Virus record (IMG/VR): IMGVR_UViG_3300020188_000808
Location: 1-64,000 of that record
Length of the DNA: 64,000 nt
Strand: one strand, 5' to 3'
Of the stretch, positions 1-64,000 are shown in pieces. The notes beneath the pieces were generated by a model. It was not told where the DNA came from. It did no database searches and was given only the letters and a program-made list of their open reading frames with translations. The stretch's first letter is position 1; each line of letters begins with the position of its first letter. The position numbers and the translations under genes are program-made.

Positions 1-80
1 ACACTATACGCATCAATAGGCCTCACTACTATACTATAAGGGTCACTACTGAACAGTTCACTAGGGTTCTCACTACTATA
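1..80 (+). repeat. Short direct repeats TCACTACT
   Basis: TCACTACT at 23-30, 43-50 and 70-77; partial TCACTA at 58-63; non-coding. Confidence 0.6.
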
Positions 81-203
81 TAGAATCATGAGTTCTTTGT
101 GATTGAGCCCGTCATCTGGGTAGAGGTGACCGGTGGTGATCAGAGGAGGATCCAGGTGGTCAAAGCCAGATCTGAGGTCTAATGGTGTCGACCTGACTTT
201 CTC

Positions 204-282
204 CAATGATATCAAGAGGTTAGGTGGGGCCAGGGGCCTCTAGTATGGCCTTTCAAAAAAGTTCAATGATTTCAAGGGGTTA
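204..282 (+). promoter_or_regulatory. Two 19-bp direct repeats resembling IHF sites
   Basis: CAATGATATCAAGAGGTTA (204-222) and CAATGATTTCAAGGGGTTA (264-282); first matches WATCAANNNNTTR exactly, second has one mismatch. Confidence 0.5.
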
Positions 283-420
283 CAAGGGTGCGGAAATCAG
301 GTCGTGTAGGGTGAATTGAACTCCGGTATCAATGTTTCCAATTACGTTCCCGGCGGGTGGATCTATCTGCGATCCTCTATGTTGAACTTCCCTCTACCTC
401 CTTGCCCTTATTGTTCTTAT

Positions 421-449
421 AGTATATGGCCAAAGGCACCTAAAGTCAA
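421..449 (-). promoter_or_regulatory. Divergent sigma70-type promoter (leftward)
   Basis: Minus strand TTGACT-17-TATACT followed by the leader ATAAGAACAATAAGGGCA, identical to the forward leader at 5578-5595. Confidence 0.75.
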
Positions 450-1603: not shown

Positions 1604-2260
1604 ATGAAAAAGACTATTATAGCAACAGCGATCTTGGCATGTTTGCATACGGCGGCCGCAGGGGCAGAGAAGCTGACATCATTCGATCACGCGGCAGAGC
1701 TAACAGATCAAGCCAAGACCATACTATTCCAAGAGCTGAACGATCAGAACGCAGAGAACCACACACATCCTGCGATCACTTGTCTAGCAGAGAACATCTA
1801 CTTTGAAGCACGAGGCGAGAGCTTTAAGGCCAAGATAGCAGTGGCCAACGTCACACGTAATAGAGTAGAGGACAGCAGATGGCCGAGTACCTACTGTGGT
1901 GTGGTTCAGCAGGGACCTGTGAGGGAATCATGGAAGACCAAGAAGATCAAGGACCTTCCGGACAACCAGCGAGTGTATTACCCACGAAAGCACAGATGTC
2001 AGTTCAGTTGGTACTGTGATGGGGTCAAAGATGTGATATGGGCCAACATGGAACGCACAGGAGAGACCATCGAAGGCAATGCTAGAGCTTGGAGAGAATC
2101 AGTACGTATTGCGATAGCCACACTGGCTCAGGGTGATTACATCATCAAGGACAACACTGGTGGGGCCACTCACTACTATAATCACAACCTAGTTGATCCG
2201 CATTGGGCAGACAGCTATAAAACCACAGCCGTTGTGGGCAATCATACGTTCAAAAAATAG
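1604..2260 (+). CDS. Cell wall hydrolase, SleB/Hydrolase_2 family, with signal peptide
   Basis: Motifs CLAENIYFEARGE, CQFSWYCDG, GATHYY, GNHTF; hydrophobic N-terminus. Confidence 0.9.
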   Translation: MKKTIIATAILACLHTAAAGAEKLTSFDHAAELTDQAKTILFQELNDQNAENHTHPAITCLAENIYFEARGESFKAKIAVANVTRNRVEDSRWPSTYCGVVQQGPVRESWKTKKIKDLPDNQRVYYPRKHRCQFSWYCDGVKDVIWANMERTGETIEGNARAWRESVRIAIATLAQGDYIIKDNTGGATHYYNHNLVDPHWADSYKTTAVVGNHTFKK

Positions 2261-4456: not shown

Positions 4457-4533
4457 CTGCCCTTAGCTCAGCTGGATAGAGCAACAGCCTTCTAAGCTGT
4501 AGGTCGTAGGTTCGAATCCTACAGGGCAGGCCA
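4457..4533 (+). tRNA. tRNA-Arg(UCU)
   Basis: Acceptor CTGCCCT/AGGGCAG, anticodon loop CTTCTAA, T-loop TTCGAAT, encoded CCA. Confidence 0.95.
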
Positions 4534-4538: not shown

Positions 4539-4626
4539 GCTCGCGTGATGGAATTGGTAGACATACCGGACTTAAAATCCGGAGGCTGTAATGGCCGTGG
4601 CGGTTCGAGTCCGCCCGCGAGTACCA
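4539..4626 (+). tRNA. tRNA-Leu(UAA)
   Basis: Acceptor GCTCGCG/CGCGAGT, anticodon loop CTTAAAA, long variable arm, GGTTCGAGTCC, encoded CCA. Confidence 0.95.
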
Positions 4627-5322: not shown

Positions 5323-5541
5323 ATGGCAACAGATTTGAAATCACACGCACAGGGCGTATCATTGACAAGGTTCGCTGGTGGTGTGGACCGCGGAGTATGC
5401 GTCCAGGTCACAACCAAGAAGCGTCAACCTGTAGGCACAGAGTTCTTTGACTCATTGCAATTGACACGAGCACAGGCCGCGGCATTGGCGGCTGACTTGA
5501 TGGACTTTGCTCAGGGCAGAGAAACAGAAGATTTTGAATAA
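5323..5541 (+). CDS. Hypothetical early protein
   Basis: ORF, GAGGGCA RBS. Confidence 0.85.
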   Translation: MATDLKSHAQGVSLTRFAGGVDRGVCVQVTTKKRQPVGTEFFDSLQLTRAQAAALAADLMDFAQGRETEDFE

Positions 5542-8322: not shown

Positions 8323-8805
8323 ATTATCGATCCGTTCACAGCCATAGCGGCGGCTACCACTGCATTCAATACTGTTAAGAAGTTTGTACATGCAGGACAA
8401 GAACTAGAGAACACACTTGGTCAAATGGGCAAGTGGTATACTAGTGTGAGTGACTTTAGACATGCACAACAGCAGGCCAAGAACCCACCATTGTTTAAAA
8501 AACTGTTTGCCGCAGGTAGTGTAGAGGAAGAAGCACTAGCACTACTAGTACACGAAAAGAAAATAGCAGAACAAGAAAAAGAACTACAGCAGATGCTCAA
8601 CATGCGTTATGGCTGGGGCACATGGGATGAACTAGTACAGATGAGGCGTAAGATACGTGCCAAGCGAGAAGCTACTGTATACGCACAAGAACAACGTCAA
8701 CGAGCGTTTATTGAAGCTGTGACCATAGGGGCTATGATCATAGCGATGTGTGTTGTCATCGGCGGTATTGTATACGCTGTGGGTCTAGGGCAAGGACGCT
8801 GGTAA
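8323..8805 (+). CDS. Hypothetical membrane protein; probable ATT start
   Basis: Frame is open 34 codons upstream of the ATG at 8425 (IIDPFTAIAAATTAF...); AGGGGG before ATT at 8323; C-terminal TM helix. Confidence 0.75.
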   Translation: MIDPFTAIAAATTAFNTVKKFVHAGQELENTLGQMGKWYTSVSDFRHAQQQAKNPPLFKKLFAAGSVEEEALALLVHEKKIAEQEKELQQMLNMRYGWGTWDELVQMRRKIRAKREATVYAQEQRQRAFIEAVTIGAMIIAMCVVIGGIVYAVGLGQGRW

Positions 8806-35149: not shown

Positions 35150-36115
35150 CTAGCTTTGGCGGCTTCTGATCATCGCTAGGATGTCTTCTGCTTTGTTGCC
35201 ATCGCCTGCCGCTTCAGTTGCCGTAGGTGCTACTGCATCAGCTACTGGAGCCTCTGCTGGTGCTACTGCTGGTGCCGCCGCTGGAGTTGGTGTAGTTGCT
35301 TTAACTGGATCACCAGTTGCCGCTCTTACGCCTGCTGGTCTAAAGTATTGACCAAATGCTTCCATGTCGTATGCTTCACCATCTACTGATGCTTCAAACA
35401 TTTTCTTGATAACTTCAACTGCTACTGCTTCAGGTTTCTTAGGCAAGTAGTCTGTCATGTTAAACAAGCCGTGGTCTTCGATAGCCTTATACTCAGCTTC
35501 ATCTAACGGACGCTCTCTACGAGCCCAGTTTGATGTTGAGTAATCAGCATATCCACCTTTGGATGTTTTAGCGATTCTAAAGTCTACACCTGCTGTGTAG
35601 TCTGTAGGTAGTTCGTTCATATCTGGATCCATTAATGCTCCCTTAATAATTTGGAAGATTTGTGGACCAATAATGAAACGTCTGATTGGGTTTTCAGGTG
35701 TTGTATCCTCTGAAAGTGGATTATCAGTTACGAAGCCTTGGAATACGTATGAACGCTTTTTCCAATACTTACGACCCATATCCTCTAACTTTGGATCTTT
35801 AAACCAGCCACGTACTTCTGAAAGTACTGGACAAGTTTCCCCATACATTTCCATACATGGTACTTGTACCTGTACTGGACGAGAGTCTGTCTCGCCTTTA
35901 ATTCCAGCAAATGGAAGTTTGATCATCAAACGTTCTTGCCAGAAAAATGTATTATTTTCGTCACCATCAGGTAAGAAACGAACTGTTGCAGTCTGTCCTT
36001 CCTTCAAATTCCAAAATGGGTAAATTGCGTTATCGCCGCCGCTGTTGTTATTAGAACCACCTGTGCGTGACTCTTGTTCTTTAAGTTTAGCTCTGATCTC
36101 TGCTAATGTTGCCAT
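35150..36115 (-). CDS. Single-stranded DNA-binding protein (gp32-like)
   Basis: VRFLP, C...CPV, WKKRSY, G.DF.I, YADYSTS. Confidence 0.88.
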   Translation of the reverse strand: MATLAEIRAKLKEQESRTGGSNNNSGGDNAIYPFWNLKEGQTATVRFLPDGDENNTFFWQERLMIKLPFAGIKGETDSRPVQVQVPCMEMYGETCPVLSEVRGWFKDPKLEDMGRKYWKKRSYVFQGFVTDNPLSEDTTPENPIRRFIIGPQIFQIIKGALMDPDMNELPTDYTAGVDFRIAKTSKGGYADYSTSNWARRERPLDEAEYKAIEDHGLFNMTDYLPKKPEAVAVEVIKKMFEASVDGEAYDMEAFGQYFRPAGVRAATGDPVKATTPTPAAAPAVAPAEAPVADAVAPTATEAAGDGNKAEDILAMIRSRQS

Positions 36116-38092: not shown

Positions 38093-39682
38093 TTATCTCA
38101 TATTAGTCGAAACGAATATAGGCATGGGCGGTTCGTAATCTTCGGCCGCTTCTGCTTGATTAAACGATTCGTACACTCTTGGATCCCAGTCTTTTAATAC
38201 TGCAATTATACGCATACTTAGTAGTGTTGCACTAACTAAATCGTCCGTTTCTCCGGGTTTTGCTTTATAACTACTACCACTTGCTACAAATCCTTTAAGC
38301 TCTGATAGTAATACTTTACTGTTTACTTCTAGTTTATCGTTCTCAATCATAGTCTTTAAACGACTACAAGCACTAATTTTTGTACTGTGTGTTGTGTTAA
38401 ATCCTTTACGGAACTTGCGTACATGTCCTTTACGCATAGGCTCACTTGTAAGTAGCCCTGGTATATTCTCTTCTCCAAGATCTCTAATAACAATTAATGC
38501 ACCTTCTCCAATACTATTGTTCTCTACACTCCAATATATATTTGATCCGTTGTTATTACAACATTCTTTAATGTAATCACATATATCTTTTAAAACTCTA
38601 ATTTGTCCTGGTATAGCAGTTTCATTGTGTCTCCACTCTGCTACTTGCTTATAGCTTGGTACTTCAAATACTTGTATTGCGGCAAAGTCGCCACCTGTAC
38701 CCATACTAGGATCAAGTGCAACAACGTAACTATTGTCCCCTGTTGGTTTTTTATACCAACGTGTTTGGCCCATGTTAAGTATTGGATCTTTGCCTTCCAT
38801 TGATGCTAACTTAATACTATTAATAAGTGTTTCATCATAGATTAAAAATTCGCAACCATACTCACGGCGAAACTTTTCTTCACCAATACGACCAATTTCA
38901 TTCTTCCTCCATTCTTCATCTCTGTCAGGATGTTCGTCCCAACTACATGTAAATCCATGAAAGCCATTCTTACCAATATCTGATTCGTTACCGTGTTCGT
39001 CAAACTTATCTGCAGACTCTTTCCAAATAATAGCAAACGTATCTTCGTCTGAGTTAGGTGTACTTGTAATAATAGCTCTACCACCTGTTGCTAGTGTAGG
39101 TGATATTGATGTCCAAAATTCTTCTGCAATATTAGGATTAACAAATGCAAACTCGTCACAGTATAGTAATGATATGGACATACCACGTCCTGTGTTTCCT
39201 GTTGTAGTAGCACTTACAATACGTGAACCGTTTTCAAATTCCATACTACCTTTGTTGTAGTTTGTTACTCCTGCTCTAATATGATCAGCACACATTTCGT
39301 ACACGTATCTAATACGTTGCATAATTTCCTGTGCGCCTGTGTATTTGTGTGCGGCAATTAGAATAGTTTGATCTGGATGGAACATAGCATACCAACACAA
39401 GTAAATTGCGGCAGTAGTAGTTTTACCAGTTTGTCTTGGTAACATATTAATATTAAAACGGAAGTCGTGATAACTCTGTAGTAACCGTTCTTGATATGCA
39501 AACGGATCAAATAATAATTTACCTTTTACAGGGTGCTGAATGAATGCAAACTTCTTAGCAAAGTACAAGTATCCATCTTTTGGATCCATGCATCTGCGTA
39601 GGTCTTCAATCTGCGCCTCAGTATATGTATCTCTGGTATGTGCCTTTTTTGTTAAGACACCATCTAAACTCTTTGTTGCCAT
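38093..39682 (-). CDS. Terminase large subunit (gp17-like)
   Basis: PRQTGKT, YCDEFAF, ITSTPN, nuclease ALDPS...DDLV. Confidence 0.95.
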   Translation of the reverse strand: MATKSLDGVLTKKAHTRDTYTEAQIEDLRRCMDPKDGYLYFAKKFAFIQHPVKGKLLFDPFAYQERLLQSYHDFRFNINMLPRQTGKTTTAAIYLCWYAMFHPDQTILIAAHKYTGAQEIMQRIRYVYEMCADHIRAGVTNYNKGSMEFENGSRIVSATTTGNTGRGMSISLLYCDEFAFVNPNIAEEFWTSISPTLATGGRAIITSTPNSDEDTFAIIWKESADKFDEHGNESDIGKNGFHGFTCSWDEHPDRDEEWRKNEIGRIGEEKFRREYGCEFLIYDETLINSIKLASMEGKDPILNMGQTRWYKKPTGDNSYVVALDPSMGTGGDFAAIQVFEVPSYKQVAEWRHNETAIPGQIRVLKDICDYIKECCNNNGSNIYWSVENNSIGEGALIVIRDLGEENIPGLLTSEPMRKGHVRKFRKGFNTTHSTKISACSRLKTMIENDKLEVNSKVLLSELKGFVASGSSYKAKPGETDDLVSATLLSMRIIAVLKDWDPRVYESFNQAEAAEDYEPPMPIFVSTNMR

Positions 39683-44428: not shown

Positions 44429-47400
44429 TTAAAGTCCTGCTATCTCACCAGTGTTTTTAAGTCTTAATGGAATGTAAATAAACTCCACAGCTTTCACTGG
44501 TTCAATTGCTATATCTAAGTAAAGCTCATTTCTATCAATTCTAGTTGGTGTGTTGTTTGATTCATCACACACTACTAAGAAGTCATATAATGCTCTTTGA
44601 CCTACTAACTCTAATAGTAAACTATCTGCTTGTGCTTTAATCTCATCACGTGTGATTTTGTCATTTGGCTCAAAGATATAAGGTTTAGCAAGTTTGTTAA
44701 ACTGTGAACGTAAGTAAATTACTAGTCTTGCAACGTTGATTCTGTCTAAAGCACTAGCATTTTTAGCTCTTGTCTTTTGACCAAAGTTAACAAGTCCTGC
44801 ACCACTTAAGAACGTTACAGGGTTAATAGCATTGCTGTACAATGTATCACGCTGTCCTTCGTTAAGTGCTACGCTTTGGAATTCACCTTCGCTTGTAATG
44901 TATCCTGCACTTGAAGCATTTGTAATTCCACCACGTCTTGTTCCTGCTGGAGCAAACCATGGAAACGATACTTGATCGCTTAGTGCCATTGTGCGTAAGA
45001 TACCATGTGAAGCTGGAACAACTACGTTGTTACCTGCGTTATCACTTGTGAATAAACTTGGATAAAACACACCTAAGTATTCATCGTATGTTACAAGTCC
45101 ATCGTCATTGTCTTCAACTGCACCTTTTACGTTAGTTGCATATTCGTTCAATGAAGTTGCATCTGGTGTTAATCTAAACGGTAAGTCACCTACAACAAAT
45201 GCACTAATGCCTCTATCATAGTTAAGTGTTTTCATTTCACCAATTAGCTCTGAGTAACCAGGTGTTGCCATCAAGTTAAAGATTCTTGAATTATCATCTC
45301 TAATATCAGCATTGCTGTTAACCATTGCTTGTAATGCTTGTACTACAACTTTACGTTGAGCTTTTCTACCAAAAGAGCCTGCACCATTTTCTTGGTTAGC
45401 TGATTCAGTTACCCATCTGTTAGTTGCGTATGCACTCATTGACTCGTCGTTGTTAAATCTAATATTAAGTCCTGTAGTATCAATGTAGTTACGTACATAT
45501 TTCTTAACGTTAAATCCTGAACGTCTAGTATTCCAAAGCAACATACCTTTTGGATATAGTGCCGGATCTGGAGCGTCAAAGTCTAAGAAGTTACTTACTA
45601 GTAATTCAGCAATAGTTCCTGCTGTATCACCTTTAACACCTGAAATGCCATAACGTGCATCAGCAAACAAAATACCGTCTTCAGTAGTTTGGTCGCCTGT
45701 ATCAAGTGCAATGAACTTCAATGAAGTGCCATTGTATTTGTAAATCTTAGGATAATTTTCTAAGTCTGCTGTACTAATCCAAATGTCGCCATTTTTAAGA
45801 TCAGTTCCATCTGATTGCTTAGTTGGCTCAGTAGCTGAAACAATTGGTCCTGCTGGATCTGTTTTATCACCACTTACTGCATTATAAAAAGGTGCAGTTG
45901 AATCTTGATAACCTACCCATGTAGTACCGTTATGAATCATTAAGTCTACTTCGTCAACAATACTGTTGTACCATAATGCACCATCAGTTGTTAATGCTGT
46001 TGGAGCCAATGTACTTGCAGTATATGTTAAGTATTTCCAGTTACTAGCAACCATATCGTATGCATTGCCTGCGGCATCTGTATACAAGTTTGGTGTTGCT
46101 GTTGCCGCATTTGAGCCATTGTAAGCTACAAATCCTGCTAAAGCTAATCCGCTGTTAGTATCTGTAATGTGGATGTCACCACCGTCATTGTGTTCAATAA
46201 CAATTCTGTTTGAAGCATCAACACTTGCTACAACGTTAGTTAATCCTGCGGAGTTAATTGCTCCTGCAACATCATCTGCATCATCTGCATTACCGTTTGT
46301 TGTAACACTTACTGTAACTGCCGCACTTAGTACAGCACTTGCTGGACTAGTTTCTGCAATATCAAAAGCATAAGTTCCAGTTACTAGTTGTGTTGTGATA
46401 ATATCTGAAATAATTTTAGTATTACCAGTTGCTTGTCTTCTGTGAATCTTAAAGTCACCAATTGGATCAGTTGCTTCATCATTATTAGTTTTGATGTAAA
46501 CTGCGCCTACAGGTAAGTTTTTACCGCCGCCTGCTTTATCTAATGCAAACAACGCCGCTTCAGGTGTTGCATACATTGGAGCTGACTTAGTTTCCCACAA
46601 GCTAGTTGTGCCGTTCCACATTTTAACTTTCCAGTTAGCACCTAAATTAGGTTGTGTAGTTTTAACCCAGATACTTCCTGTTGGACGTGGACTTGTGTCA
46701 GTTGACTTATATTCAGGTACACTAGTATGCGGAGCAATACTTAACTTCGGTGCTTTAAAAGTAGCCGCTGTTAAACCAATCTCTGCTAATAGTGTTGAAG
46801 CGTTAGTTGCTAATACAACGTCTACGCCTGTTGAATAAATCTCTAATTTGTTGTTAACTACTGCTGAAGTAACTCCAGCAATACCTGCTGAACCAATAGC
46901 ACTTACAACATCACTTAATGCTGTTCCGCCACTAGTTACTACAGTTCCGTTAATGCTCATCGAAGCACCGTTAGTAATTGTTGCGTTGGAAACCGTACCA
47001 GTAACAGTTGCCCATGAACTAATCCATGCTGTAGTTCCTACTTGTACCCATGTACCATCGGATTTTTTGTAGTATAACTTGTTAAGTGTTGTAGTTGCAA
47101 CGATAGCGTAGTCACCAATTGCGCCAACAGAAGTTTTTGGTGCGCCGCCTGTTACTTTAGTTGTATCTGTAATCACTGTTGGAATTTTGTTAGTAAAGCT
47201 CTGTCCGCCAGTAACACTAGCCGATGCGCCGTTCCATTCAAAAATACCAAACACACTATTTGCTGTATCAAACCAATAAGTGCCGTCTGCTGGATTAGCC
47301 GCTGGTGCTGTAGCAGATGCCATTAGTTCTTTAGTGTTTAATGATGCTCTAGTTACATAAGCTCTGTTAGCTACTCCTAAGTATGAGTAGGCCGCTTGTA

Positions 47401-47680
47401 ACCCGTATTCGTTTAATTCACTACCGTGTAGTGCATTGTTGTTTGTGTCCGTATAGAAAGTTGGATCTCCAAACAAGTCTGTTAATTCTCTTTGTGAGGT
47501 AACCAAATATGGTTTGCCTGCATTTGCCGCTGTTGTACCTGCGGCTGTTCCTGTTCCAGCACCGTTCGTTTTGTCTTGTGCGGAAACAACAAAAATCATT
47601 GGTACTGTACCTGGCTCAGCTGGTGTATAGAAACTTTCGTCTATAACGCTGACCTGTACTCCTGGTGATACTAAAGCCAT
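44429..47680 (-). CDS. Tail sheath protein (gp18-like), enlarged
   Basis: LVSPGV, WFAPAGTRRG, INPV, DRINVARL, FEPND, CDESNN, EFIYI. Confidence 0.95.
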   Translation of the reverse strand: MALVSPGVQVSVIDESFYTPAEPGTVPMIFVVSAQDKTNGAGTGTAAGTTAANAGKPYLVTSQRELTDLFGDPTFYTDTNNNALHGSELNEYGLQAAYSYLGVANRAYVTRASLNTKELMASATAPAANPADGTYWFDTANSVFGIFEWNGASASVTGGQSFTNKIPTVITDTTKVTGGAPKTSVGAIGDYAIVATTTLNKLYYKKSDGTWVQVGTTAWISSWATVTGTVSNATITNGASMSINGTVVTSGGTALSDVVSAIGSAGIAGVTSAVVNNKLEIYSTGVDVVLATNASTLLAEIGLTAATFKAPKLSIAPHTSVPEYKSTDTSPRPTGSIWVKTTQPNLGANWKVKMWNGTTSLWETKSAPMYATPEAALFALDKAGGGKNLPVGAVYIKTNNDEATDPIGDFKIHRRQATGNTKIISDIITTQLVTGTYAFDIAETSPASAVLSAAVTVSVTTNGNADDADDVAGAINSAGLTNVVASVDASNRIVIEHNDGGDIHITDTNSGLALAGFVAYNGSNAATATPNLYTDAAGNAYDMVASNWKYLTYTASTLAPTALTTDGALWYNSIVDEVDLMIHNGTTWVGYQDSTAPFYNAVSGDKTDPAGPIVSATEPTKQSDGTDLKNGDIWISTADLENYPKIYKYNGTSLKFIALDTGDQTTEDGILFADARYGISGVKGDTAGTIAELLVSNFLDFDAPDPALYPKGMLLWNTRRSGFNVKKYVRNYIDTTGLNIRFNNDESMSAYATNRWVTESANQENGAGSFGRKAQRKVVVQALQAMVNSNADIRDDNSRIFNLMATPGYSELIGEMKTLNYDRGISAFVVGDLPFRLTPDATSLNEYATNVKGAVEDNDDGLVTYDEYLGVFYPSLFTSDNAGNNVVVPASHGILRTMALSDQVSFPWFAPAGTRRGGITNASSAGYITSEGEFQSVALNEGQRDTLYSNAINPVTFLSGAGLVNFGQKTRAKNASALDRINVARLVIYLRSQFNKLAKPYIFEPNDKITRDEIKAQADSLLLELVGQRALYDFLVVCDESNNTPTRIDRNELYLDIAIEPVKAVEFIYIPLRLKNTGEIAGL

Positions 47681-47790: not shown

Positions 47791-48129
47791 ATGAGACCTT
47801 TATGTAAATGCGGCACTAAACCTGTAGCTATAAACTACTACAAAAACGGAAAACCCTTTTATAGAAGTAAATGCGAGTCATGTACTAGACACGGCAAGCC
47901 TATACACGGTGCTTCTAAATGGAAACAATCAGGGTATGAAAAGAAAACAGAATGTGACAAGTGTGGGTTTAAAAGCAAACACCCGGAGCAGTTTTCAGTG
48001 TACTACATTGACGGTGATCTTAATAATATAAGGTTTAGTAATCTAAAAACAATATGTGCTAATTGCACTAAAATTATTTACAAAGAAGGATTTAGATGGA
48101 AGCAAGGTGATCTGCGACCTGACTTCTAA
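47791..48129 (+). CDS. Degenerate HNH-like Zn-binding protein
   Basis: CDKCG...YYIDGD.NN...NL.TICANC; TAAATA-N5-ATG at 47791. Confidence 0.65.
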   Translation: MRPLCKCGTKPVAINYYKNGKPFYRSKCESCTRHGKPIHGASKWKQSGYEKKTECDKCGFKSKHPEQFSVYYIDGDLNNIRFSNLKTICANCTKIIYKEGFRWKQGDLRPDF

Positions 48130-56183: not shown

Positions 56184-59100
56184 GCCTGAGCTTCACCCCA
56201 TCTTAGAATAATGTTCGCTTTAGTATCTGTACCACCTGTTTTATAAACGTTGATTGCTAATACGTCTGGACCATTTGGATAAGTTCCTCTACCACCTAGT
56301 GTGGTATTAGTTAACTCTTTCAATGAGCTTAGAGATAATGAACTTGATTGTCCTGGTGTTGCAATAAAGGAGAATACAGTTTCACCTGGCTGTGCATAAG
56401 GTGGTTGTCCAAATAAGAACCCTACCGTATCACCTGCTGTTATCGTTGCATTTGAACTCTGTGTAAACGTTACTCTGTAATATGTTGTTGAACCAAATGA
56501 TAGTTCTTGCACACCAGCAACCGCAGTACCCGCTGAGAACTTAGAGTCTTCAACAATGTCGCCTGCAATAGCGCCTGTTGCGTTCCAGGTTGTTTCTGTA
56601 AAGAACAAGTAGTTAGAACCAGTTAAATCTCCACCAATTCTAAATGTTACTGTTGGATCAGCATTTTGTACTAGAATATTTTGATTAAATCTTAAACGTA
56701 CTCTACCGTACCATGGTTCTTGATAAACTTCTTCAATAGTTCTTGGATTACTTGTATAGTCGTTACTACCTGATGCAGTAACCTGCACACCTGTTGTAAC
56801 TTCGCCATTTAAAGCGGCAAACTCTGCTGTTGACAAATACTGATATCTACTATTTCTATTACCGTATAAGAATTCAGCAGTTTGTGTCATTGGACCTTGT
56901 ACTGTTGCACTTCTAATAACCTGTGTAGCACCAGTTGACCATACAACAGAACCGCCCGGAGCAACTTGAGCAAAGCTCGGTTGTCCACCAGCCGCCGCAC
57001 CAGTTAGTGCAGACCAACCAACATCATTTGGATTAATTGGATAGTTTTGTGGATTCAAAATTCCTTCAACAACAATACCGCCAGTAATTGGATTATTTGA
57101 ACTGTCATATCCGTCTGATGTAATTTCAATACCTTCTAGTAGCAACTGAGCTCTGTTTAGTAGTTCTCTTTCACCTAAGTCACCAACAATAGCGTTACTA
57201 ACACTAGGTGCTAGTCTTAACATAAACACAGTATTTCTTAATGTACTAATATCGTTACCTGCAGAAGCGTATGAGAAAATATAACCACGGTCTTCATCAA
57301 ATCCACCGTCTGTTAGGAACGCTGAACCCCAGTGTGATATGATTGGAGTAATTGTATTACTAATCAAAATTACACCAGTTCGCTCGTCATGTGGTACAGC
57401 ACCACCTGCTGTATAAGTTCTTGTTGCACCTGCCGCAAAGTTTGTTAGTGGAGCACTTCTAGTACACCCTGTTAGGGTATCACCTGTTACACCAGTATAA
57501 GATATCATTTCGTTATCAATAATAACTGTACCAGTTGTTGGGAAGAATGAAGATGTAATTAATGGAATTGTATTTTGTGTTGCATCCATTGCCGTCGCTA
57601 GCCTATCATTTGGACCTTCGTTAGTAACTTCATAACGCACAGGCATGTTACCAGTACGCATAAATGCTTCTGTGTTAATGTTTGAGTTACGCATTCTGTG
57701 ATAGAAAATAAAGTTACCATCATCACCACGTAGCATGTAGTCAATAAATCCAGCACCGTACCAACTGTACTGAATACCAATCATCTGCATCTTACTGATG
57801 TCCATGATATATCCACTACTTCCTAGACCGTCTAGTGTGTCTTTGTTAAAGTCAGCTTGTTTAGTTTTCTTATCACTAATCAAACATAATTTCACACCAG
57901 TAGCATTTGAATTACCTCTAAAGTCAGGTGTTACTGTCATAGCATTATCTGCTGTAATCTGTGAAACAACGTGTGTCATTCCTTTAATAACAATTCTATC
58001 ACCAGCTTTTAACTGATCTCTAAATCTTGTTCCTGACCCTGTACATGTGTTTGAATCAACATTAATTGCAACAGTACCTGCTAACTGTAGTGTAGCAGTT
58101 CTTTGTACTGCACTAAAGTTTGTTCCATCGTACTCCATAAAGATTCCGTTTTGATCATCAAATGCACCTGAACGCACAGTTGCACCGTGCCAGTTAAGTA
58201 ATGATACTTGGGCTCTTGTACTTAATACTGGTGTTAATGAAGCAGGAGCAATTTGCGAAATAACTTTAAATGTTCTTTCACTTACAATACTTGCTACTGT
58301 GTAATTTCCATTATATCCTGGAGTTTCAATACCAATTAATCTAATTTGTCCACCAACTTGTAGTCCATGGTCAACGTCATCTGTTGTAACTGTAATGAAA
58401 GTACCTGCTAGTAGATCGTCTGCTGTTACATCTAATAGATCGTAACTTGGAGCAAACAACGCACCAGTGGTATACATAATACCTTTACCTGACTGGTATC
58501 TAATATATTTTTTACTCTGTCTAATTGCTTGAGCACCGTGTTGCGGTCCTCCTGTTCCAAGCATAACTCCACCATCATATGGTCTGTGTACAAAGAAACT
58601 ATCTGGTCTTGGATAAAGCGTTGCACTAATATCACCTGTTTGTGTAATAGTACCTGGAGCTCTACACTGATATCTTAAACTTGTTGTAGTTGGAACCTGT
58701 TGTGCAAAGAACGGTCCTTCTAATAGTGTATGATTGTTAACGCCATCGTCTGAGTTAACTGTAACAATAAATGCATCTCCTGGAATCAATCCATGTGCTG
58801 ATGCAAATGAAACTTCTGTAGTTGCCAACGCCGCAAATCCAATTAATGTTCTAGCTGGTATTTGAGCAGTTATTAATTCTGACATAGTTACTGTTGCATA
58901 CGTTACTGTTGTATCTCCTGCAACTGCTGTTCCTACAATACTTGCGTCAACAATACTACCGTCTGTTGCTACTTCAGCAATAGTAATTGTTGCATCGTTA
59001 GTTGGTGATGTACCTCCTAACTCTGTACCTGCTACTTTAATTTTATTACCAGCTACATAAGATTCACCATCAACTGTAATTATTGGATTACTATAACTGC

Positions 59101-62100
59101 TACTAGTTCTTTGAATAGTAAATTCTGCATTTGAACCAAAGTTTCCTAATGGTGTTGGACCAACATCAACATATGATCCTACTCCACTTGGTCCTGTACC
59201 TGCGGTAGATACTGAAGCAATTGAACCTTCTCCGGTTCTTGTTCCGCTATTATCTGTAGTAAGAATATTAATTGTTAAATCGTTTGCTGGGCTTTCGCCA
59301 CCTAGTTGTGTACCCGGAACACGTATGTTTTGATCTGGAAAGTATCCAGTTCCTGGAGTATTAACTACTGCTGAATATACTTGGTTACTAATTGTAATAT
59401 CAAATGTTGCAGTACTACCAGATAATGTTGTTATCTGTCCTGCTGATTGTGATATATCTTGGTATACAACCTCATCATTACCTGTTCCTGAAATACTTAC
59501 AGTTAGGATCTCTCCGCCACTGTCAATAGTTAGTACAGTAATTGTTGCATCGTTTGCTGGAGTTGCACCACCTAGTTCGGTACCTGCTACTACAAATGTT
59601 TCGCCAACTAAGTAACCGCCGCCTGCATTAGTAATGTTTACTCCATAAACTGTTGCAGTTTTTGTAACACTGAAGTCTGCACCAACACCTGCTCCTGCTG
59701 GATATGTATACGTTACACTTGGATATGTTTCGTTAGCATTTGGTCCTGTACCAGTAATAGTAAATCCGGTAATAACACCAGAATTTACAGATGTTACTTC
59801 TATGAGTGCATCGTTAGTTGGACTACTTCCACCTGGGAATGTGTCTCCTATAATAAACATTCTGTCGCCAACTGCAAATCCCTGCGTAGGAGCCGCTGAT
59901 GTACCTGTATGTGTAATACTTAAAATTGTTCCTGCGCCATCTACTGATGTAATTGTAATAGTAATATCGTTGGTTGGTGATGTACCGCCAACGTTAGAAC
60001 CTAGTATTGTAAGTGTTGAACCTTGAGCATAACTATCTCCAGCTGTTGAACCTAATACAACAGTATAAGTTGTGTCAGCGTTTTGAGTAACATTAAATGT
60101 TGCTCCAGTACCAAAGACATTAAATCCTGATACAATATTAGTAAATGTTGCACTATTAACAGCCGTACCTGTAACTGAAACTCCTGTAATTTCACCACTA
60201 CCACCAACGCTGTCGATAGTAACTGTTGCATCGTTTCCTGGACTTGCGCCACCTAAATCAGAACCAAGAACTAGTAAAGTTTCACCTTGTGTGTATCCTG
60301 ATCCTGCACCAGGAGCGGTAACTGTATATACATTTCCTGTAAACCCTATGTTAATTTCAGCTCCAGTACCAATTGAACTTGTAGTAAATGGTACAGCGGA
60401 ATAGTTTGCTACAGCATCGCCACCAATTCCTGAATCAGTGAATGTTAAAATTGCACCAGCGCCATCTACTGAATCAACAGTAATATCTAAATCGTTTGTT
60501 GGACTTGCTCCGCCAAACACAGTACCTGGAATTCTAATAACTGATCCAACTGTGTATCCAGCATCAAGTGAGCCTGCATTTTTTGTAGTTGTGTAAATGT
60601 TATTTGTTAATACAACGTCCCAAGCCGCACCAGTTCCGCCAATTTGGGTTTCTGGAGGTAAATCAGTGTATGTTGGATTATCTGTAACTGCTGTATAAGT
60701 TCCAGCACTACTAGTAACATCAAGAATTAATCCAGTACCTAAGCCGTTAAGATTAGTACCTGTTACATTTGTAAATACTGCATTACCATCAAACGCTGAA
60801 CCTGTAAAGCTAAATGTTAAAATTGCACCACTACCGTCAACTGTATCAACTGTAATTCTAAGATCATTAGTATTTGATATACCACCTAATTGTTGTCCGT
60901 CAACAATTAATACATCGCCTGCTTCAAAATTAATACCTGCGGTTTGTAGTGAAACAGTATATTGTCCTAAAGTAGGATTTCCTCTATCAATATTAAATGT
61001 TGCGCCTGATCCCAATGATGTATAATTAGTACCAGTTATTCCTGTGTAACTAACTGTATTTCCTACAATGTTTGCTGTAGTATTTCCATCAAAGTTAAGT
61101 GTATTTCCTACAATAGTAGTAACATGAATCGCTGTTCCGTCACCTCTATCAATTGCTTCACCTTGTACAATACCTGTTGCATCAACAACATCAATAGCAT
61201 TAGAGCCTGCTGGAAAATCTCCGCTAACGTCTAAAGTATTTAATGTACCACCGTTTTCAAATCCTACTCCGCCACCAGTTAAACTTGTAACCTGAGCGCC
61301 AACTGCAATGCCTGCTCCGGTAGCAACCGTTGCAACAACAAAAGTCCAATCAGCACCACCGCCGTTTCCTAATGATGCATCTGAAATAGTAATAATATCT
61401 CCTGGAGCATTATTTCGTCCTGGATTTTCAATTGCTGTAACTGTCGCGGCACCTGTGCCGTCAACAACAATAGTATATGTACCTACAATTAAATCCGCCG
61501 CAATACTATCGGAACTACCTGTGCTTACTGAATATGTTCCTGCTAAACGTGAAGCATCAGCCGCTCCATATGTACCAACAGTTGATACTTGTCCGCTTTC
61601 GTTAACCACTGGAGAACCAACTTCTGGAGCAACACCAGACCATGTAATAATATTTGCACCTTCTGCCGCCGTTAATGGGTTGACAAATGTTCCTTCAGCA
61701 CCTTGTGATAAGATACTAAACTGTGGTTGGCCAATTGCCGCACCTGTATAAAATCCAGCTTGTCTTAATTGTGTGTAGAATGTTGATAATACTTCACCGT
61801 TAGTAACACCAACTTTTGATTTTGCAAAAAATGTAAATGTATTATCTGTTGGAACAGTTGAAACTACAAATGATCCTTCTGCTCTACTTGCTCCAGCAAC
61901 ACTATTTTCTAATGCTTTAATTGTAATAGGAGTACCTGCCGTAATACCATGTGGTCCAACTGTTGTTACAGTAATTTTACTTTGGCCAATACCATCAGTT
62001 CCAACTGATGCATCTGTTACAACTGATGATACTTGTGTATCAGTACCTGGTACTTCGTAAATACTTGGATATCCTCTTTGCATAGCAATCGCTTGCCATT

Positions 62101-63889
62101 TAGTGGGCTGTAACCCGTATTCAAAGTCAGCATCAAGCATAGATACTGAGTTACTAACACGCATACGTTCAATAGCATCTGTACCAAAGTCATGTGGTCT
62201 AGTAATAACATCACCTTGATCAATAAAGATTTGAATATCATCTGTATCGTAAAATTGTTTAACTTCTTCTTTGATTGGTAATACATTTAATCCGTTTTCA
62301 ATAACGTTTGTAATAACACCAAATAGTTCTGTTACTCTTTGACTAACATTTAATTCACTAATTTGTAAAATAGTATTTTGTGAAATTGCACCTGCACCAA
62401 CTTGTTCTGTTGGGTATAGTGTATTTGAAAAAATGTAATTGTTAATTACATCTCTAGCAAAATGTTTTGCTAAAATTTCTGGCATTCTATCGCCGTCAAT
62501 TTGTGGCGTAGTTTGTACCCAATACTTACTAGCATTGTAATGTGTTTTTGTATTTCCAGAATATTTAATATCGTGTGTAATTCCTTCAATATTAAATCCC
62601 ATATCTCTTTCACACTTAGCAGTATTGTATGTATAGTTGTACCATACATCTGAAATTGCATTAGCTGTTGCTGATACAAATATGTGATCTGAAGTATCAG
62701 ATGAAATACCAACATTAATTGTAACTGTGTCTGTAGTAGAACTTTCAATTAAAATTGGTTTATTATAAGTTGGATCTGTTCCTGTATCATTAGGCACACC
62801 ACTTGCTCTTGGATATGCATGTTCAGTAGCATGATTATCTTTAGCACAAGTAAATGTTAAACCACCAGGAGCAATTCTAATATAATCTCCTCTATAAAAC
62901 GTATGACTAGGAATTGTTAAAACCATTTGGCCACTTGCTGGACTAAATGTTGCCGCAGTTGGAGTAAATCTTGTACTTGCCGCAACTTTACCTGCAATCC
63001 AAGCAACAGTTTCTTTCTTTAAAAACTCTAAGTTTGCTTCTAATAGTGCTACTGCTTTTGGAGAATAAACTCTATTATCTGTATCTTTCTTTAGGTATAC
63101 TGTAGTAACTGTACCAGTTCTTTCAAGGAACTTTGGAAAGTCTTCTTCAATACCTTTAGTTAACTGTGAAGTATCATCTGTTTGGAATGCAGTTGACGCA
63201 CCTAAATCAGGGTCACTAAAGTTATATAAAATTTCGTTGTTTGTTGAATCTGTAATCAACAATAAATCGTTTGCAGGAACACGAGTTTGAATTTTAACAC
63301 TTGAAATTTGTGATCTCTGTAGTGGAGGAATAACATCTAAGCCGCCTGCAATAACAGTTGTAATGATTCCCATTAGTTCTGTTATTCTTGCATCAGTACC
63401 TGTTTCATAGTTACTGCCGTTGTCATAAACTTGCACTTGTGCTGGTGGTTCTGATTGTAAACTTGTGTAAGGAACTTGTGGTAGAATGTAGTTATTAATT
63501 AAACTAACAACAAAGTTCTTAGCCGCAATTTCAGGAGCTCTATCACCATCAATCTGCGGAGTTGAATTAATCCAATACTTACTTGCTAAGAAACGTGCTT
63601 GATAATTTCCGCCATAACGCAAATCCCAAAGTACGCCGGTTGCTCCGTCTGTACCTTCTAAATTGTATCGTGTATCTCGTCTACATAGTACATCATTGTA
63701 TGTGTAGTTGTACCATATTGATCCTGGATTACCTGTATTTGCCGCAACTTGTGCAGTAAGCCATGCTGACAGTTCTTCAACAATAAAGTTAATGTTTGAT
63801 TTTATTAGACTGTATGCATACGGAAATCTATTTTCACTAATAGGAATTCCTGGTTGAAATATATACGAGTCAATTTTTTTCTTTGCCAT
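56180..63889 (-). CDS. Very large repetitive virion structural/fibre protein (2569 aa)
   Basis: Gly/Thr-rich; eight GGxSPxND-type repeats; duplicated YNYTYN..C.RD module. Confidence 0.8.
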   Translation of the reverse strand: MAKKKIDSYIFQPGIPISENRFPYAYSLIKSNINFIVEELSAWLTAQVAANTGNPGSIWYNYTYNDVLCRRDTRYNLEGTDGATGVLWDLRYGGNYQARFLASKYWINSTPQIDGDRAPEIAAKNFVVSLINNYILPQVPYTSLQSEPPAQVQVYDNGSNYETGTDARITELMGIITTVIAGGLDVIPPLQRSQISSVKIQTRVPANDLLLITDSTNNEILYNFSDPDLGASTAFQTDDTSQLTKGIEEDFPKFLERTGTVTTVYLKKDTDNRVYSPKAVALLEANLEFLKKETVAWIAGKVAASTRFTPTAATFSPASGQMVLTIPSHTFYRGDYIRIAPGGLTFTCAKDNHATEHAYPRASGVPNDTGTDPTYNKPILIESSTTDTVTINVGISSDTSDHIFVSATANAISDVWYNYTYNTAKCERDMGFNIEGITHDIKYSGNTKTHYNASKYWVQTTPQIDGDRMPEILAKHFARDVINNYIFSNTLYPTEQVGAGAISQNTILQISELNVSQRVTELFGVITNVIENGLNVLPIKEEVKQFYDTDDIQIFIDQGDVITRPHDFGTDAIERMRVSNSVSMLDADFEYGLQPTKWQAIAMQRGYPSIYEVPGTDTQVSSVVTDASVGTDGIGQSKITVTTVGPHGITAGTPITIKALENSVAGASRAEGSFVVSTVPTDNTFTFFAKSKVGVTNGEVLSTFYTQLRQAGFYTGAAIGQPQFSILSQGAEGTFVNPLTAAEGANIITWSGVAPEVGSPVVNESGQVSTVGTYGAADASRLAGTYSVSTGSSDSIAADLIVGTYTIVVDGTGAATVTAIENPGRNNAPGDIITISDASLGNGGGADWTFVVATVATGAGIAVGAQVTSLTGGGVGFENGGTLNTLDVSGDFPAGSNAIDVVDATGIVQGEAIDRGDGTAIHVTTIVGNTLNFDGNTTANIVGNTVSYTGITGTNYTSLGSGATFNIDRGNPTLGQYTVSLQTAGINFEAGDVLIVDGQQLGGISNTNDLRITVDTVDGSGAILTFSFTGSAFDGNAVFTNVTGTNLNGLGTGLILDVTSSAGTYTAVTDNPTYTDLPPETQIGGTGAAWDVVLTNNIYTTTKNAGSLDAGYTVGSVIRIPGTVFGGASPTNDLDITVDSVDGAGAILTFTDSGIGGDAVANYSAVPFTTSSIGTGAEINIGFTGNVYTVTAPGAGSGYTQGETLLVLGSDLGGASPGNDATVTIDSVGGSGEITGVSVTGTAVNSATFTNIVSGFNVFGTGATFNVTQNADTTYTVVLGSTAGDSYAQGSTLTILGSNVGGTSPTNDITITITSVDGAGTILSITHTGTSAAPTQGFAVGDRMFIIGDTFPGGSSPTNDALIEVTSVNSGVITGFTITGTGPNANETYPSVTYTYPAGAGVGADFSVTKTATVYGVNITNAGGGYLVGETFVVAGTELGGATPANDATITVLTIDSGGEILTVSISGTGNDEVVYQDISQSAGQITTLSGSTATFDITISNQVYSAVVNTPGTGYFPDQNIRVPGTQLGGESPANDLTINILTTDNSGTRTGEGSIASVSTAGTGPSGVGSYVDVGPTPLGNFGSNAEFTIQRTSSSYSNPIITVDGESYVAGNKIKVAGTELGGTSPTNDATITIAEVATDGSIVDASIVGTAVAGDTTVTYATVTMSELITAQIPARTLIGFAALATTEVSFASAHGLIPGDAFIVTVNSDDGVNNHTLLEGPFFAQQVPTTTSLRYQCRAPGTITQTGDISATLYPRPDSFFVHRPYDGGVMLGTGGPQHGAQAIRQSKKYIRYQSGKGIMYTTGALFAPSYDLLDVTADDLLAGTFITVTTDDVDHGLQVGGQIRLIGIETPGYNGNYTVASIVSERTFKVISQIAPASLTPVLSTRAQVSLLNWHGATVRSGAFDDQNGIFMEYDGTNFSAVQRTATLQLAGTVAINVDSNTCTGSGTRFRDQLKAGDRIVIKGMTHVVSQITADNAMTVTPDFRGNSNATGVKLCLISDKKTKQADFNKDTLDGLGSSGYIMDISKMQMIGIQYSWYGAGFIDYMLRGDDGNFIFYHRMRNSNINTEAFMRTGNMPVRYEVTNEGPNDRLATAMDATQNTIPLITSSFFPTTGTVIIDNEMISYTGVTGDTLTGCTRSAPLTNFAAGATRTYTAGGAVPHDERTGVILISNTITPIISHWGSAFLTDGGFDEDRGYIFSYASAGNDISTLRNTVFMLRLAPSVSNAIVGDLGERELLNRAQLLLEGIEITSDGYDSSNNPITGGIVVEGILNPQNYPINPNDVGWSALTGAAAGGQPSFAQVAPGGSVVWSTGATQVIRSATVQGPMTQTAEFLYGNRNSRYQYLSTAEFAALNGEVTTGVQVTASGSNDYTSNPRTIEEVYQEPWYGRVRLRFNQNILVQNADPTVTFRIGGDLTGSNYLFFTETTWNATGAIAGDIVEDSKFSAGTAVAGVQELSFGSTTYYRVTFTQSSNATITAGDTVGFLFGQPPYAQPGETVFSFIATPGQSSSLSLSSLKELTNTTLGGRGTYPNGPDVLAINVYKTGGTDTKANIILRWGEAQA

Positions 63890-63897
63890 CTGTTTTC

Positions 63898-63999
63898 CTA
63901 CATTCCGAAAGCAACAGCCATTGCTGATGCCCTACTGTCTACATATTTTTTGTTAGTAACTGTTGTAGCTGTTGTTGGGTTTGCTTGTACTTGTGCCGA
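63898..63999 (-). CDS. 3' end of a virion fibre-type protein (partial)
   Basis: ...TVTNKKYVDSRASAMAVAFGM*; KKYVD-type motif; runs off the window. Confidence 0.6.
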   Translation of the reverse strand, partial: SAQVQANPTTATTVTNKKYVDSRASAMAVAFGM

Positions 64000-64000
64000 A

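What the first reader, a model, noticed from the sequence alone, without database searches (positions are those of the whole stretch)
1..64000. Apparent systematic avoidance of GCWGC
Seen: single Ala codons are mostly GCA/GCT, yet every Ala-Ala pair I inspected begins with GCC or GCG. Examples are GCG GCC GCA near 1651, GCC GCG GCA near 5475, GCG GCG GCT near 8347, GCG GCG GCA in gp32 near 35275, and many in the sheath and fibre genes. I found no GCAGC/GCTGC by eye while GCSGC is common; the scan was not exhaustive. Established: GCWGC is the TseI/ApeKI-type site, and phages deplete sites that are targeted. This could point to the host or to a self/non-self mechanism.
Basis: partly seen in the sequence, partly recalled or inferred. 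Interest (0 to 1): 0.65.

Follow-up and report, generated by a model that had tools for sequence, protein, structure and literature searches.

The report
Phage genome purged of GCWGC sites
This uncultured marine jumbo phage has removed every copy of the 5-base restriction site GCWGC from at least 268 kb of DNA by silent codon changes; this is an extreme, lineage-specific case of the known phage strategy of losing sites that host restriction enzymes cut.

Summary
GCWGC occurs 0 times in the window, where dinucleotide shuffles expect 80±9. It occurs 0 times in the whole 267,783-bp record, where synonymous-codon shuffles expect 312±8 (Poisson about 1e-137).

The missing sites reappear as GCSGC (434 observed, 111 expected), almost all at Ala-Ala pairs. 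The first Ala codon is GCC or GCG in 335 of 335 pairs. Ala before any other residue is 91% GCA/GCT.

Many independent metagenome runs hold the sequence. The changes are silent, so this is not a base-calling artefact.

The record is a marine or salt-marsh jumbo myovirus, about 75% complete. Its nearest cultured relative is PA5oct. Among about 160 metagenomic relatives the trait is polymorphic:
- Whole lineages have 0 sites.
- One 335-kb relative has 35 of about 405.
- A complete 357.6-kb relative has 770 of 863.
- The state changes at least 6 times on the terminase tree.

Other palindromes are purged in other combinations: WGCGCW, RCGCGY, RCATGY and AGCT (0 of 315 in one relative). No DNA methyltransferase or avoidance-linked nuclease gene was found.

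Best explanation: ongoing selection by a host GCWGC-specific type II restriction enzyme (TseI/ApeKI-like or BbvI-like). The host is unidentified. This is a striking new example of a known phenomenon.

The parts
1..64000 (.). GCWGC-free DNA. The whole window has 0 sites on either strand. It is part of a 267,783-bp record that also has none.
   Evidence: 0 observed against 80±9 (window, dinucleotide shuffles) and 312±8 (record, codon shuffles).
1652..1660 (+). Example Ala-Ala-Ala run written GCG GCC GCA. GCS is used wherever the next codon starts with GC.
5476..5484 (+). Example Ala run written GCC GCG GCA.
8347..8355 (+). Example Ala run written GCG GCG GCT.
35150..36115 (-). Gene for the gp32-like single-strand DNA-binding protein.
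   Evidence: (phrog_1192, E 1e-63).
38093..39682 (-). Large terminase gene, used as marker. Its conserved Ala-Ala pairs at window 39408-39412, 39351-39355 and 38679-38683 read GCCGC here. In all 40 depleted relatives they read GCC/GCG-GC. In most non-depleted relatives they read GCT/GCA-GC.
44429..47680 (-). Contigs of four independent metagenome runs were laid on 42000-47900, and none of their 36 differences creates a site.

Best explanation
The phage lineage is under strong, continuing selection against GCWGC. I infer that a restriction endonuclease in its host population, which is still unidentified, cuts unmethylated GCWGC. The enzyme would be a type IIP enzyme like TseI or ApeKI, or a type IIS enzyme like BbvI (GCAGC in either orientation). 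Sequence alone cannot tell these two apart.

The phage appears to carry ordinary, unmethylated DNA, so any site is a liability. Each site has therefore been removed by a silent change:
- GCW-GCN became GCS-GCN at Ala-Ala pairs.
- AGC or TGC after xGC was replaced by other Ser or Cys codons.
- CAG or CTG between G and C was replaced by CAA or other Leu codons.

What is shown: the total purge, its silent nature, that it is maintained rather than inherited, that it differs between relatives, and that other restriction-type palindromes are purged in other combinations. What is inferred: the selecting agent is a host restriction-modification system.
For: 1. Size and specificity. 0 sites against 312±8 expected under amino-acid- and codon-usage-preserving shuffles. 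Among 3,345 words and degenerate palindromes tested, GCWGC is the strongest outlier, at about 1e-137.

2. The loss is silent. The only one-step neighbour that is enriched is GCSGC (434 against 111). Its excess of about 320 matches the deficit. The excess lies mainly in the Ala-Ala frame (335 against 56), with none in frame 2 (5 against 5).

3. Selection is continuing, not inherited.
- At Ala-Ala pairs conserved between this record and two other site-free relatives, the third base is C/G in 72 of 72 and 51 of 51 cases.
- At control Ala-x positions, a GCS codon in one genome is GCS in the other in only 23 of 108 cases.
- Where only one of the two genomes has Ala-Ala, the other uses GCW in 24 of 29 and 23 of 26 cases.
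- In the non-depleted relative G001 the same conserved Ala-Ala pairs are GCW in 35 of 43 cases.
- The same pattern holds at conserved terminase sites across 72 relatives.

4. Relatives differ.
- Zero sites: G012 0 of 204, G014 0 of 130, G015 0 of 99.
- Strong depletion: G028 35 of about 405.
- Near-complete depletion with clustered leftovers: G016 3 of 53, G018 10 of 49.
- Normal: G001 770 of 863 (complete, 357.6 kb), G002 242 of 250, G003 127 of 135.
- The state changes at least 6 times on the terminase tree.

5. The family purges other type II-like palindromes in varying combinations.
- This record: WGCGCW 0 of 78, RCGCGY 0 of 35, AAGCTT 5 of 77.
- G014: AGCT 0 of 315, RCATGY 0 of 44.
- G015: RCATGY 0 of 50.
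- G001, which keeps GCWGC: RCGCGY 0 of 62, AGCGCT 0 of 53.
- AGCT-free and GCWGC-free states occur in all four combinations.

6. No Pfam C5, N4/N6 or Dam-type DNA methyltransferase, and no DpdA or QueC, in this record or its relatives.

7. GCWGC is an established restriction-modification specificity: TseI (PMC3643589), ApeKI (PMC8557920), and methylation found in environmental genomes (PMC6329791, PMC8919816). Site avoidance by phages is well documented (PMC6286503).

8. Genes found only in the depleted lineages include tail-fibre-type proteins. That fits different hosts.
Against: The host is unknown, so no cognate restriction-modification system has been shown. Terminase hits in MAGs are scattered over unrelated taxa and look like binning errors.

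The record is only about 75% complete. A methyltransferase, a nuclease or some GCWGC sites could lie in the missing part. However, the equivalent region in depleted relatives is also site-free: 9 loci, 150 kb, 124 expected.

Most genes specific to the depleted lineages have no recognisable function. Mosaic contigs such as L066 imply recombination between depleted and non-depleted phages, so their host ranges overlap at least sometimes. The open-ocean methylome literature I found reports GCWGC methylation only in a Chloroflexi MAG (PMC8919816).
Confidence: 0.8

Rival explanations
1. Self/non-self device. The phage encodes its own GCWGC-specific nuclease to destroy host DNA, and it protects itself by having no sites instead of by methylation or base modification.
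For: The purge is absolute (0 of about 312), which is what self-protection would need. Seventeen ORFs are shared by depleted lineages and absent from non-depleted ones, and most have no known function, for example L142:2341-3207, window 10863-11633 and L137:8548-9378. About 25% of the genome is missing.
Against: None of those ORFs matches a nuclease, restriction enzyme or defence model in Pfam, PHROGs, PADLOC or NCBIfam. The same family shows several other total purges in shifting combinations: AGCT, RCATGY, WGCGCW, RCGCGY. That would require a changing set of phage nucleases. One lineage tolerates 35 scattered sites, which does not fit a self-targeting nuclease. I know of no precedent for this mechanism.
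Confidence: 0.05
2. Another kind of selection on GCWGC. The agent could be a host defence that is not a classical type II system (type III, BREX-like or phosphorothioate-linked). It could also be a cis-acting signal the phage must confine to one place.
For: The selecting agent was not observed. The missing quarter of the genome could hold a functional site cluster.
Against: Both orientations are purged equally. The leftover sites in G028 point both ways (23 GCAGC, 12 GCTGC on the + strand), unlike evasion of a type III system by orientation. A short symmetric 5-bp site is typical of type II enzymes. From my own knowledge, BREX and type I sites are longer or bipartite. Regions missing from this record are also site-free in depleted relatives. 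Non-depleted relatives with the same core machinery carry hundreds of sites, so no conserved cis function is likely.
Confidence: 0.08
3. Mutational decay rather than selection. For example, host m5C methylation of GCWGC followed by deamination, or a general codon-pair or translation bias against GCW-GCN.
For: From my own knowledge, m5C sites are mutation hot spots. The bulk of the sites fall in a single codon-pair context.
Against: The deamination products are not enriched: GTWGC/GCWAC are at 1.20 and 0.96, and GCWGT/ACWGC at 1.11 and 1.08. The central-base product GCSGC is enriched 3.9-fold. All deamination changes at Ala-Ala would alter the protein, so only selection on the silent central base fits. 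Frames 1 and 2 are cleared too. Relatives with the same codon usage use GCW-GCN freely.
Confidence: 0.02
4. Sequencing or assembly artefact, such as systematic miscalls at a modified motif.
For: Modification-linked miscalls at GCWGC are known for nanopore data (PMC10687267 appears in the GCWGC literature search).
Against: At least 19 runs from 16 studies hold the sequence at 0.78-1.00 of sampled words. A second assembly, G012, is 99.93% identical over 186 kb and is also site-free. Contigs of four runs laid on 42000-47900 agree. A W-to-S miscall would create missense changes in frames 1 and 2, but frame 2 GCSGC is at expectation (5 against 5).
Confidence: 0.01

Closest known systems
Restriction-site avoidance in phage genomes (surveyed in PMC6286503). 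From my own knowledge, classic cases are Staphylococcus phage K lacking GATC and Bacillus phages lacking GGCC.
   Same: A short palindromic restriction-modification recognition site is far below expectation in a virulent phage with apparently unmodified DNA. It is removed by silent substitutions, and the pattern differs between lineages.
   Different: The scale and completeness: 0 of more than 300 expected in at least 268 kb of a jumbo phage. The host is unknown. The site, GCWGC, was not reported as avoided by phages in the papers I could search. The trait switches at least 6 times within one uncultured marine family and combines freely with other total purges.
TseI / ApeKI (type IIP, G^CWGC) and BbvI (type IIS, GCAGC) restriction-modification systems
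   Same: The purged word is exactly their recognition sequence. GCSGC, which they do not cut, is enriched.
   Different: No such enzyme or methyltransferase was found here, because the host is unknown. TseI and ApeKI come from thermophiles. The marine enzyme, if it exists, is an unidentified enzyme of the same specificity. The two enzyme types cannot be told apart from the phage sequence.
Virus-encoded restriction-modification or host-DNA nucleases (from my own knowledge: chlorovirus R-M systems, T4 EndoII/EndoIV)
   Same: These also discriminate viral DNA from host DNA through a DNA feature.
   Different: Those viruses protect themselves by methylation or base substitution and carry the enzymes. 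Here no methyltransferase, modification pathway or nuclease candidate was detected.

Membership tests
Restriction-site avoidance (anti-restriction by site loss) | The site is significantly under-represented against a null that keeps protein sequence and codon usage | tested here: met
   0 against 312.4±8.4. It is the top outlier of 3,345 motifs.
Restriction-site avoidance (anti-restriction by site loss) | The avoided word is a known restriction-modification recognition sequence | tested here: met
   GCWGC is the site of TseI (PMC3643589) and ApeKI (PMC8557920). From my own knowledge, GCAGC is the BbvI site.
Restriction-site avoidance (anti-restriction by site loss) | The host carries the cognate restriction-modification system | not testable with these tools
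   The host is unknown. MAG co-binning is inconsistent, and relatives cannot be drawn for a virus record.
Restriction-site avoidance (anti-restriction by site loss) | Phage DNA is not otherwise protected (no cognate methyltransferase or base hypermodification) | tested here: inconclusive
   No PF00145, PF01555, PF02086, PF01702 or PF06508 hits in this record or its relatives. However, the record is 75% complete and novel enzymes would be missed.
Restriction-site avoidance (anti-restriction by site loss) | The avoidance is lineage-specific and maintained by selection | tested here: met
   At least 6 state changes on the terminase tree. The Ala context-switch test supports continuing selection.
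Phage-encoded nuclease with self-protection by site absence | A nuclease gene is present in depleted lineages and absent from non-depleted ones | tested here: inconclusive
   17 lineage-linked ORFs were found. None has a nuclease or restriction-enzyme match. Many have unknown function.
Base-calling artefact at a modified motif | The change is seen in one platform or assembly only and produces missense changes in non-silent frames | tested here: not met
   Many independent runs and assemblies agree. There is no frame-2 excess of GCSGC.
Methylation-driven deamination decay | C-to-T and G-to-A products of the site are enriched | tested here: not met
   Neighbour words lie between 0.92 and 1.20, apart from GCSGC at 3.9.

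The most novel reading that the evidence does not exclude
The site-free genome is one half of a self/non-self system. A still unrecognised phage-encoded GCWGC-specific nuclease, among the ORFs of unknown function specific to the depleted lineages or in the missing 25% of the genome, shreds host DNA. The phage would be immune simply because it has no sites. That is a protection mode without methylation or base modification, and I know of no described phage that uses it.
Probability: 0.05. Interest if true: 0.85.

Novelty: new member of a known kind. Interest (0 to 1): 0.5.

Why it matters
The phage belongs to an abundant, cosmopolitan and uncultured family of marine and estuarine jumbo phages whose hosts are unknown.

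Each lineage carries a combination of total site purges. For this record the combination is GCWGC + WGCGCW + RCGCGY, with near-loss of AAGCTT and GCTAGC. This reads as a predicted restriction repertoire of the host population. It could be matched against methylomes of metagenome-assembled genomes from the same samples to assign hosts.

Close relatives range from 0 through about 9% to about 100% of the expected sites, and imported segments still carry sites. That makes the family a natural series for measuring how fast restriction pressure rewrites a 300-kb genome.

Two of the purged words, WGCGCW and RCGCGY, did not turn up as restriction specificities in the literature I could search. They may point to undescribed enzymes.

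Tried and rejected
- **Host identification.**
  - The genome search does not draw relatives for a virus record.
  - The terminase scan of 185,579 species genomes hit only MAGs of unrelated taxa: Polynucleobacter twice, Neomarinimicrobiota, an MGII archaeon, Crocinitomicaceae and Spirochaetaceae. I read these as binning errors, not hosts.
  - No psbA was found, so this is not an obvious cyanophage.
  - The 5-aminolevulinate synthase gene of relatives resembles genes of Pseudomonadota, but that is only a lead.
- **Protection by modification as the reason some relatives keep GCWGC.** No C5, N4/N6 or Dam methyltransferases, DpdA or QueC were found in either group. The 7-deazaguanine genes reported for PA5oct (PMC12191111) are absent here.
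- **Nuclease among lineage-specific ORFs.** Pfam, PHROGs, PADLOC and NCBIfam scans found none. A weak Cas13 N-terminal hit for L137:8548-9378 (E 6.7e-5) is probably noise.
- **Population variants.** 36 differences in contigs of four runs create no site. Only 1.2% of possible substitutions could, so the test has no power.
- **Literature.** No paper was found on GCWGC avoidance in phages.
- Two genome-fetch runs and one pattern search failed on size rules and were corrected. One atlas call failed because of N in the locus and was repeated on the homologue.
- **Careful tree.** The careful IQ-TREE search did not finish, so the quick tree was used.
Full report
**1. Check of the observation**

A direct count finds no GCAGC and no GCTGC in the 64-kb window, while GCSGC occurs 110 times. 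The tool's own control gives 80.45±9.45 expected from 100 dinucleotide-preserving shuffles.

The window is the first 64 kb of a 267,783-bp virus record, G000. The whole record also has zero sites.
- Maximal-order Markov expectation: about 298.
- 200 synonymous-codon shuffles that keep every protein and each gene's codon usage: 312.4±8.4, minimum 292.
- In a scan of 3,345 words and degenerate palindromes against the codon-shuffle null, GCWGC is the most extreme, with Poisson probability about 1e-137.

- The four quoted Ala runs are at the stated places.
- Genome-wide, the first codon of an Ala-Ala pair is GCC in 109 cases, GCG in 226 and GCA/GCT in 0.
- Ala before any other residue is GCA 3276, GCT 1750, GCC 262, GCG 239.

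The other two frames are cleared too. AGC and TGC are never used after a codon ending in GC. CAG and CTG are never used between xxG and Cxx.

**2. Where the sites went, and why this is not an artefact or a mutation bias**

GCSGC is the only one-step neighbour that is enriched: 434 observed against 111 expected. Its excess equals the deficit of GCWGC. All other neighbours, including the C-to-T and G-to-A deamination products, lie between 0.92 and 1.20. The excess is mainly in the Ala-Ala frame (335 against 56), and frame 2 has none (5 against 5). A systematic W-to-S miscall would have produced missense changes in the other frames.

The sequence is independently supported.
- 19 runs from 16 studies, mostly salt-marsh metagenomes, hold it at 0.78-1.00 of sampled words.
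- A second IMG/VR assembly, G012, is 99.93% identical over 186 kb and is equally site-free.
- Contigs of four runs laid on 42000-47900 agree. None of their 36 differences creates a site, but this has little power because only 1.2% of substitutions could.

**3. What the genome is**

G000 is a linear IMG/VR record that CheckV rates 75% complete.

Its genes include a large terminase, tail sheath and tube, a gp32-like SSB, UvsX and a helicase. The nearest cultured phages are Pseudomonas phage PA5oct (terminase 53% identity) and the Rak2-like jumbo phages (44%). Hundreds of marine, estuarine and freshwater metagenomic relatives exist. One complete relative, G001, has 357,559 bp.

No Pfam C5, N4/N6 or Dam-type DNA methyltransferase, DpdA/TGT or QueC was detected in G000 or in up to 27 related records. 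I therefore saw no sign of DNA methylation, or of the 7-deazaguanine pathway suggested for PA5oct (PMC12191111).

**4. The trait in relatives**

In 80 loci around the terminase gene, every relative with at least 82% terminase identity has 0 sites. At 78-80% identity there are zero, partial and normal loci.

Whole records give these counts:

| Record | Size or note | GCWGC observed / expected |
|---|---|---|
| G014 | 113 kb | 0 / 130 |
| G015 | 84 kb | 0 / 99 |
| G016 | – | 3 / 53 |
| G018 | – | 10 / 49 |
| G028:C57 | 335 kb, Red Sea contig filed as a Neomarinimicrobiota MAG | 35 / about 405 |
| G001 | complete, 357.6 kb | 770 / 863 |
| G002 | – | 242 / 250 |
| G003 | – | 127 / 135 |

- On a quick IQ-TREE tree of the terminase, the window sits in a clade of 42 rows that are all depleted. 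The sister clade of 38 rows is mostly normal but holds scattered depleted members.
- The fewest state changes on that tree is 6, with 45 rows depleted and 31 normal.
- G028 is closer in gene content to the non-depleted G001 than to G000 (58% against 52% median identity). I therefore read its depletion as independent.
- Leftover sites in nearly clean genomes are clustered: five within 300 bp of one ORF in G018, and three within 3.4 kb in G016. L066 is dense in sites on one side and clean on the other. This looks like recently recombined segments that have not yet been purged.
- The part of the genome missing from G000, around a 5-aminolevulinate synthase gene in G001 and G028, is also site-free in depleted lineages: 9 loci, 150 kb, 124 sites expected.

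**5. Evidence for continuing selection**

At three Ala-Ala pairs conserved in the terminase, all 40 depleted relatives have GCC/GCG-GC. Most normal relatives have GCT/GCA-GC (window coordinates).

Genome-wide ortholog comparisons give the same answer:
- Conserved Ala-Ala pairs are S/S in 72 of 72 cases (G000 against G014) and 51 of 51 (G000 against G015).
- At control Ala-x positions, a GCS codon in G000 is GCS in G014 in only 23 of 108 cases. Third positions are therefore close to randomised at this divergence.
- Where only one genome has Ala-Ala, that genome uses GCS and the other uses GCW in 24 of 29 and 23 of 26 cases.
- Against the non-depleted G001, the conserved Ala-Ala pairs are GCW in G001 in 35 of 43 cases.

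The third base follows the local context within each genome. That is what selection against the 5-mer predicts, and shared ancestry does not.

**6. Other purged sites**

The family purges other palindromes, in different combinations (codon-shuffle expectations).

| Record | Purged or strongly depleted sites (observed / expected) |
|---|---|
| G000 | WGCGCW 0/78; RCGCGY 0/35; AAGCTT 5/77; GCTAGC 1/22; CTGCAG 16/79; GTGCAC 9/38 |
| G014 | AGCT 0/315; RCATGY 0/44; WGCGCW 0/34 |
| G015 | RCATGY 0/50; WGCGCW 0/23 |
| G002 | WGCGCW 0/32 |
| G001 (keeps GCWGC) | RCGCGY 0/62; AGCGCT 0/53; GTGCAC 2/42 |

Among the loci around the synthase gene, AGCT-free and GCWGC-free states occur in all four combinations.

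So the phages that keep GCWGC use the same strategy against other sites. They are simply not exposed to a GCWGC enzyme. This mosaic is the main reason to prefer diverse host restriction-modification systems over a mechanism of the phage's own.

**7. Mechanism and rivals**

The best explanation (confidence 0.8) is selection by a GCWGC-specific type II restriction enzyme in the host population. It would be TseI/ApeKI-like (PMC3643589, PMC8557920) or BbvI-like. Absence of GCAGC on both strands is the same thing as absence of GCWGC, so the two cannot be separated.

- **Type III-style evasion by site orientation.** This is unlikely. The 35 leftover sites in G028 point both ways, 23 and 12.
- **Phage-encoded nuclease (self/non-self).** I looked for genes tied to the trait. 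Seventeen ORFs are shared by depleted records and absent from G001, G002 and G003. They include 2OG-Fe(II) oxygenases, small-molecule methyltransferases, a redoxin and tail-fibre-type proteins (Phage_tail_APC). Several have unknown function. None matches a nuclease or restriction enzyme. The idea has no support, but it cannot be excluded (0.05).
- **Deamination-driven decay and artefact.** Both are contradicted by the results in section 2.

**8. Host**

The host was not identified. Terminase homologues in MAGs are spread over unrelated taxa. There is no psbA. The aminolevulinate synthase of relatives resembles those of Pseudomonadota, which is only a lead.

GCWGC methylation has been reported in freshwater and marine Chloroflexi genomes (PMC6329791, PMC8919816). 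Nothing links them to this phage. From my own knowledge, m5C is poorly seen by the SMRT method those studies used.

**9. Comparison with what is known, and verdict**

Restriction-site avoidance by phages is well documented (PMC6286503). This finding is a new and unusually clean example of it, not a new kind of system.

Four features stand out:
- The purge of a frequent 5-mer from a jumbo genome is complete.
- Close relatives show a graded and repeatedly switching state.
- The purge combines with other total purges, including a 4-mer, AGCT, at 0 of 315.
- Each lineage's set of purged sites predicts the restriction repertoire of an unknown host of an abundant uncultured phage family.

I found no paper describing GCWGC avoidance in phages. 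I also found no restriction literature for WGCGCW or RCGCGY. REBASE could not be consulted.

Noticed in passing
window 1-64000 and all of G000: Two further degenerate palindromes are completely absent. WGCGCW is 0 of 78 expected, including the mixed form AGCGCA/TGCGCT at 0 of 42. RCGCGY is 0 of 35. RCGCGY is absent from all five large relatives tested, including the one that keeps GCWGC. Neither word turned up as a restriction specificity in the paper search.
   Followed up: partly
G000 whole record (window counts: AAGCTT 2, GCTAGC 2): Several classic 6-bp sites are strongly but not fully depleted: AAGCTT 5/77, GCTAGC 1/22, CTGCAG 16/79, GTGCAC 9/38, TCTAGA 19/74, GCATGC 4/22, TTCGAA 19/51.
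   Followed up: partly
G014 = L106-L111 (113 kb relative, terminase 85% identical): This relative lacks the 4-mer AGCT entirely (0 of 315 expected). It also lacks RCATGY (0/44), as well as GCWGC. Other relatives (for example L237 and L206-L212) lack AGCT but keep GCWGC.
   Followed up: partly
window 4457-4533 and 4539-4626 (+): tRNA-Arg(TCT) and tRNA-Leu(TAA) lie side by side, and a third tRNA-Arg(GCG) lies at G000 264598-264674. The complete relative G001 carries 27 tRNA genes, mostly in a region that G000 lacks.
   Followed up: partly
L143:4083-11302 (G000 172083-179302, +): A run of ORFs absent from G001 holds four Asp/Arg beta-hydroxylase-like (2OG oxygenase) paralogues and a tryptophan-halogenase-like gene (E 2.6e-72).
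   Followed up: no
window 20890-22376, 31207-31881, 32661-33245 (-): A 2OG-Fe(II) oxygenase, a weak SAM-methyltransferase-like ORF, a TylF-type O-methyltransferase (E 1.5e-34) and a redoxin/AhpC-like protein. All are shared with depleted relatives and absent from the non-depleted ones. None looks like a DNA methyltransferase.
   Followed up: partly
L081:927-2135 (G001) and L157:8820-10013 (G028): Relatives encode a 5-aminolevulinate synthase (haem pathway). It is 73% identical between the two, present in hundreds of IMG/VR contigs, and most like genes of Pseudomonadota. The region is missing from G000.
   Followed up: partly
L150/L151 (PBPT01000016.1, 335 kb; PBPT01000082.1, 153 kb); also L149, L152-L156: Public MAGs labelled Neomarinimicrobiota, Polynucleobacter (two), Methanobacteriota, Crocinitomicaceae and Spirochaetaceae contain contigs of this phage family. 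These are probably binning errors that inflate those MAGs.
   Followed up: partly
window 56180-63889 (-): A single ORF of 2,569 aa, not examined further. Avoider-specific tail-fibre-type genes lie just downstream in G000 (68-75 kb).
   Followed up: no
G000 coding sequence: Runs of A are rarer than codon shuffles predict: AAAAA 1444/2103 and AAAAAA 359/710. A/T-rich palindromes such as RAWWTY are also rare. The same is seen in relatives, so it is unrelated to GCWGC.
   Followed up: no
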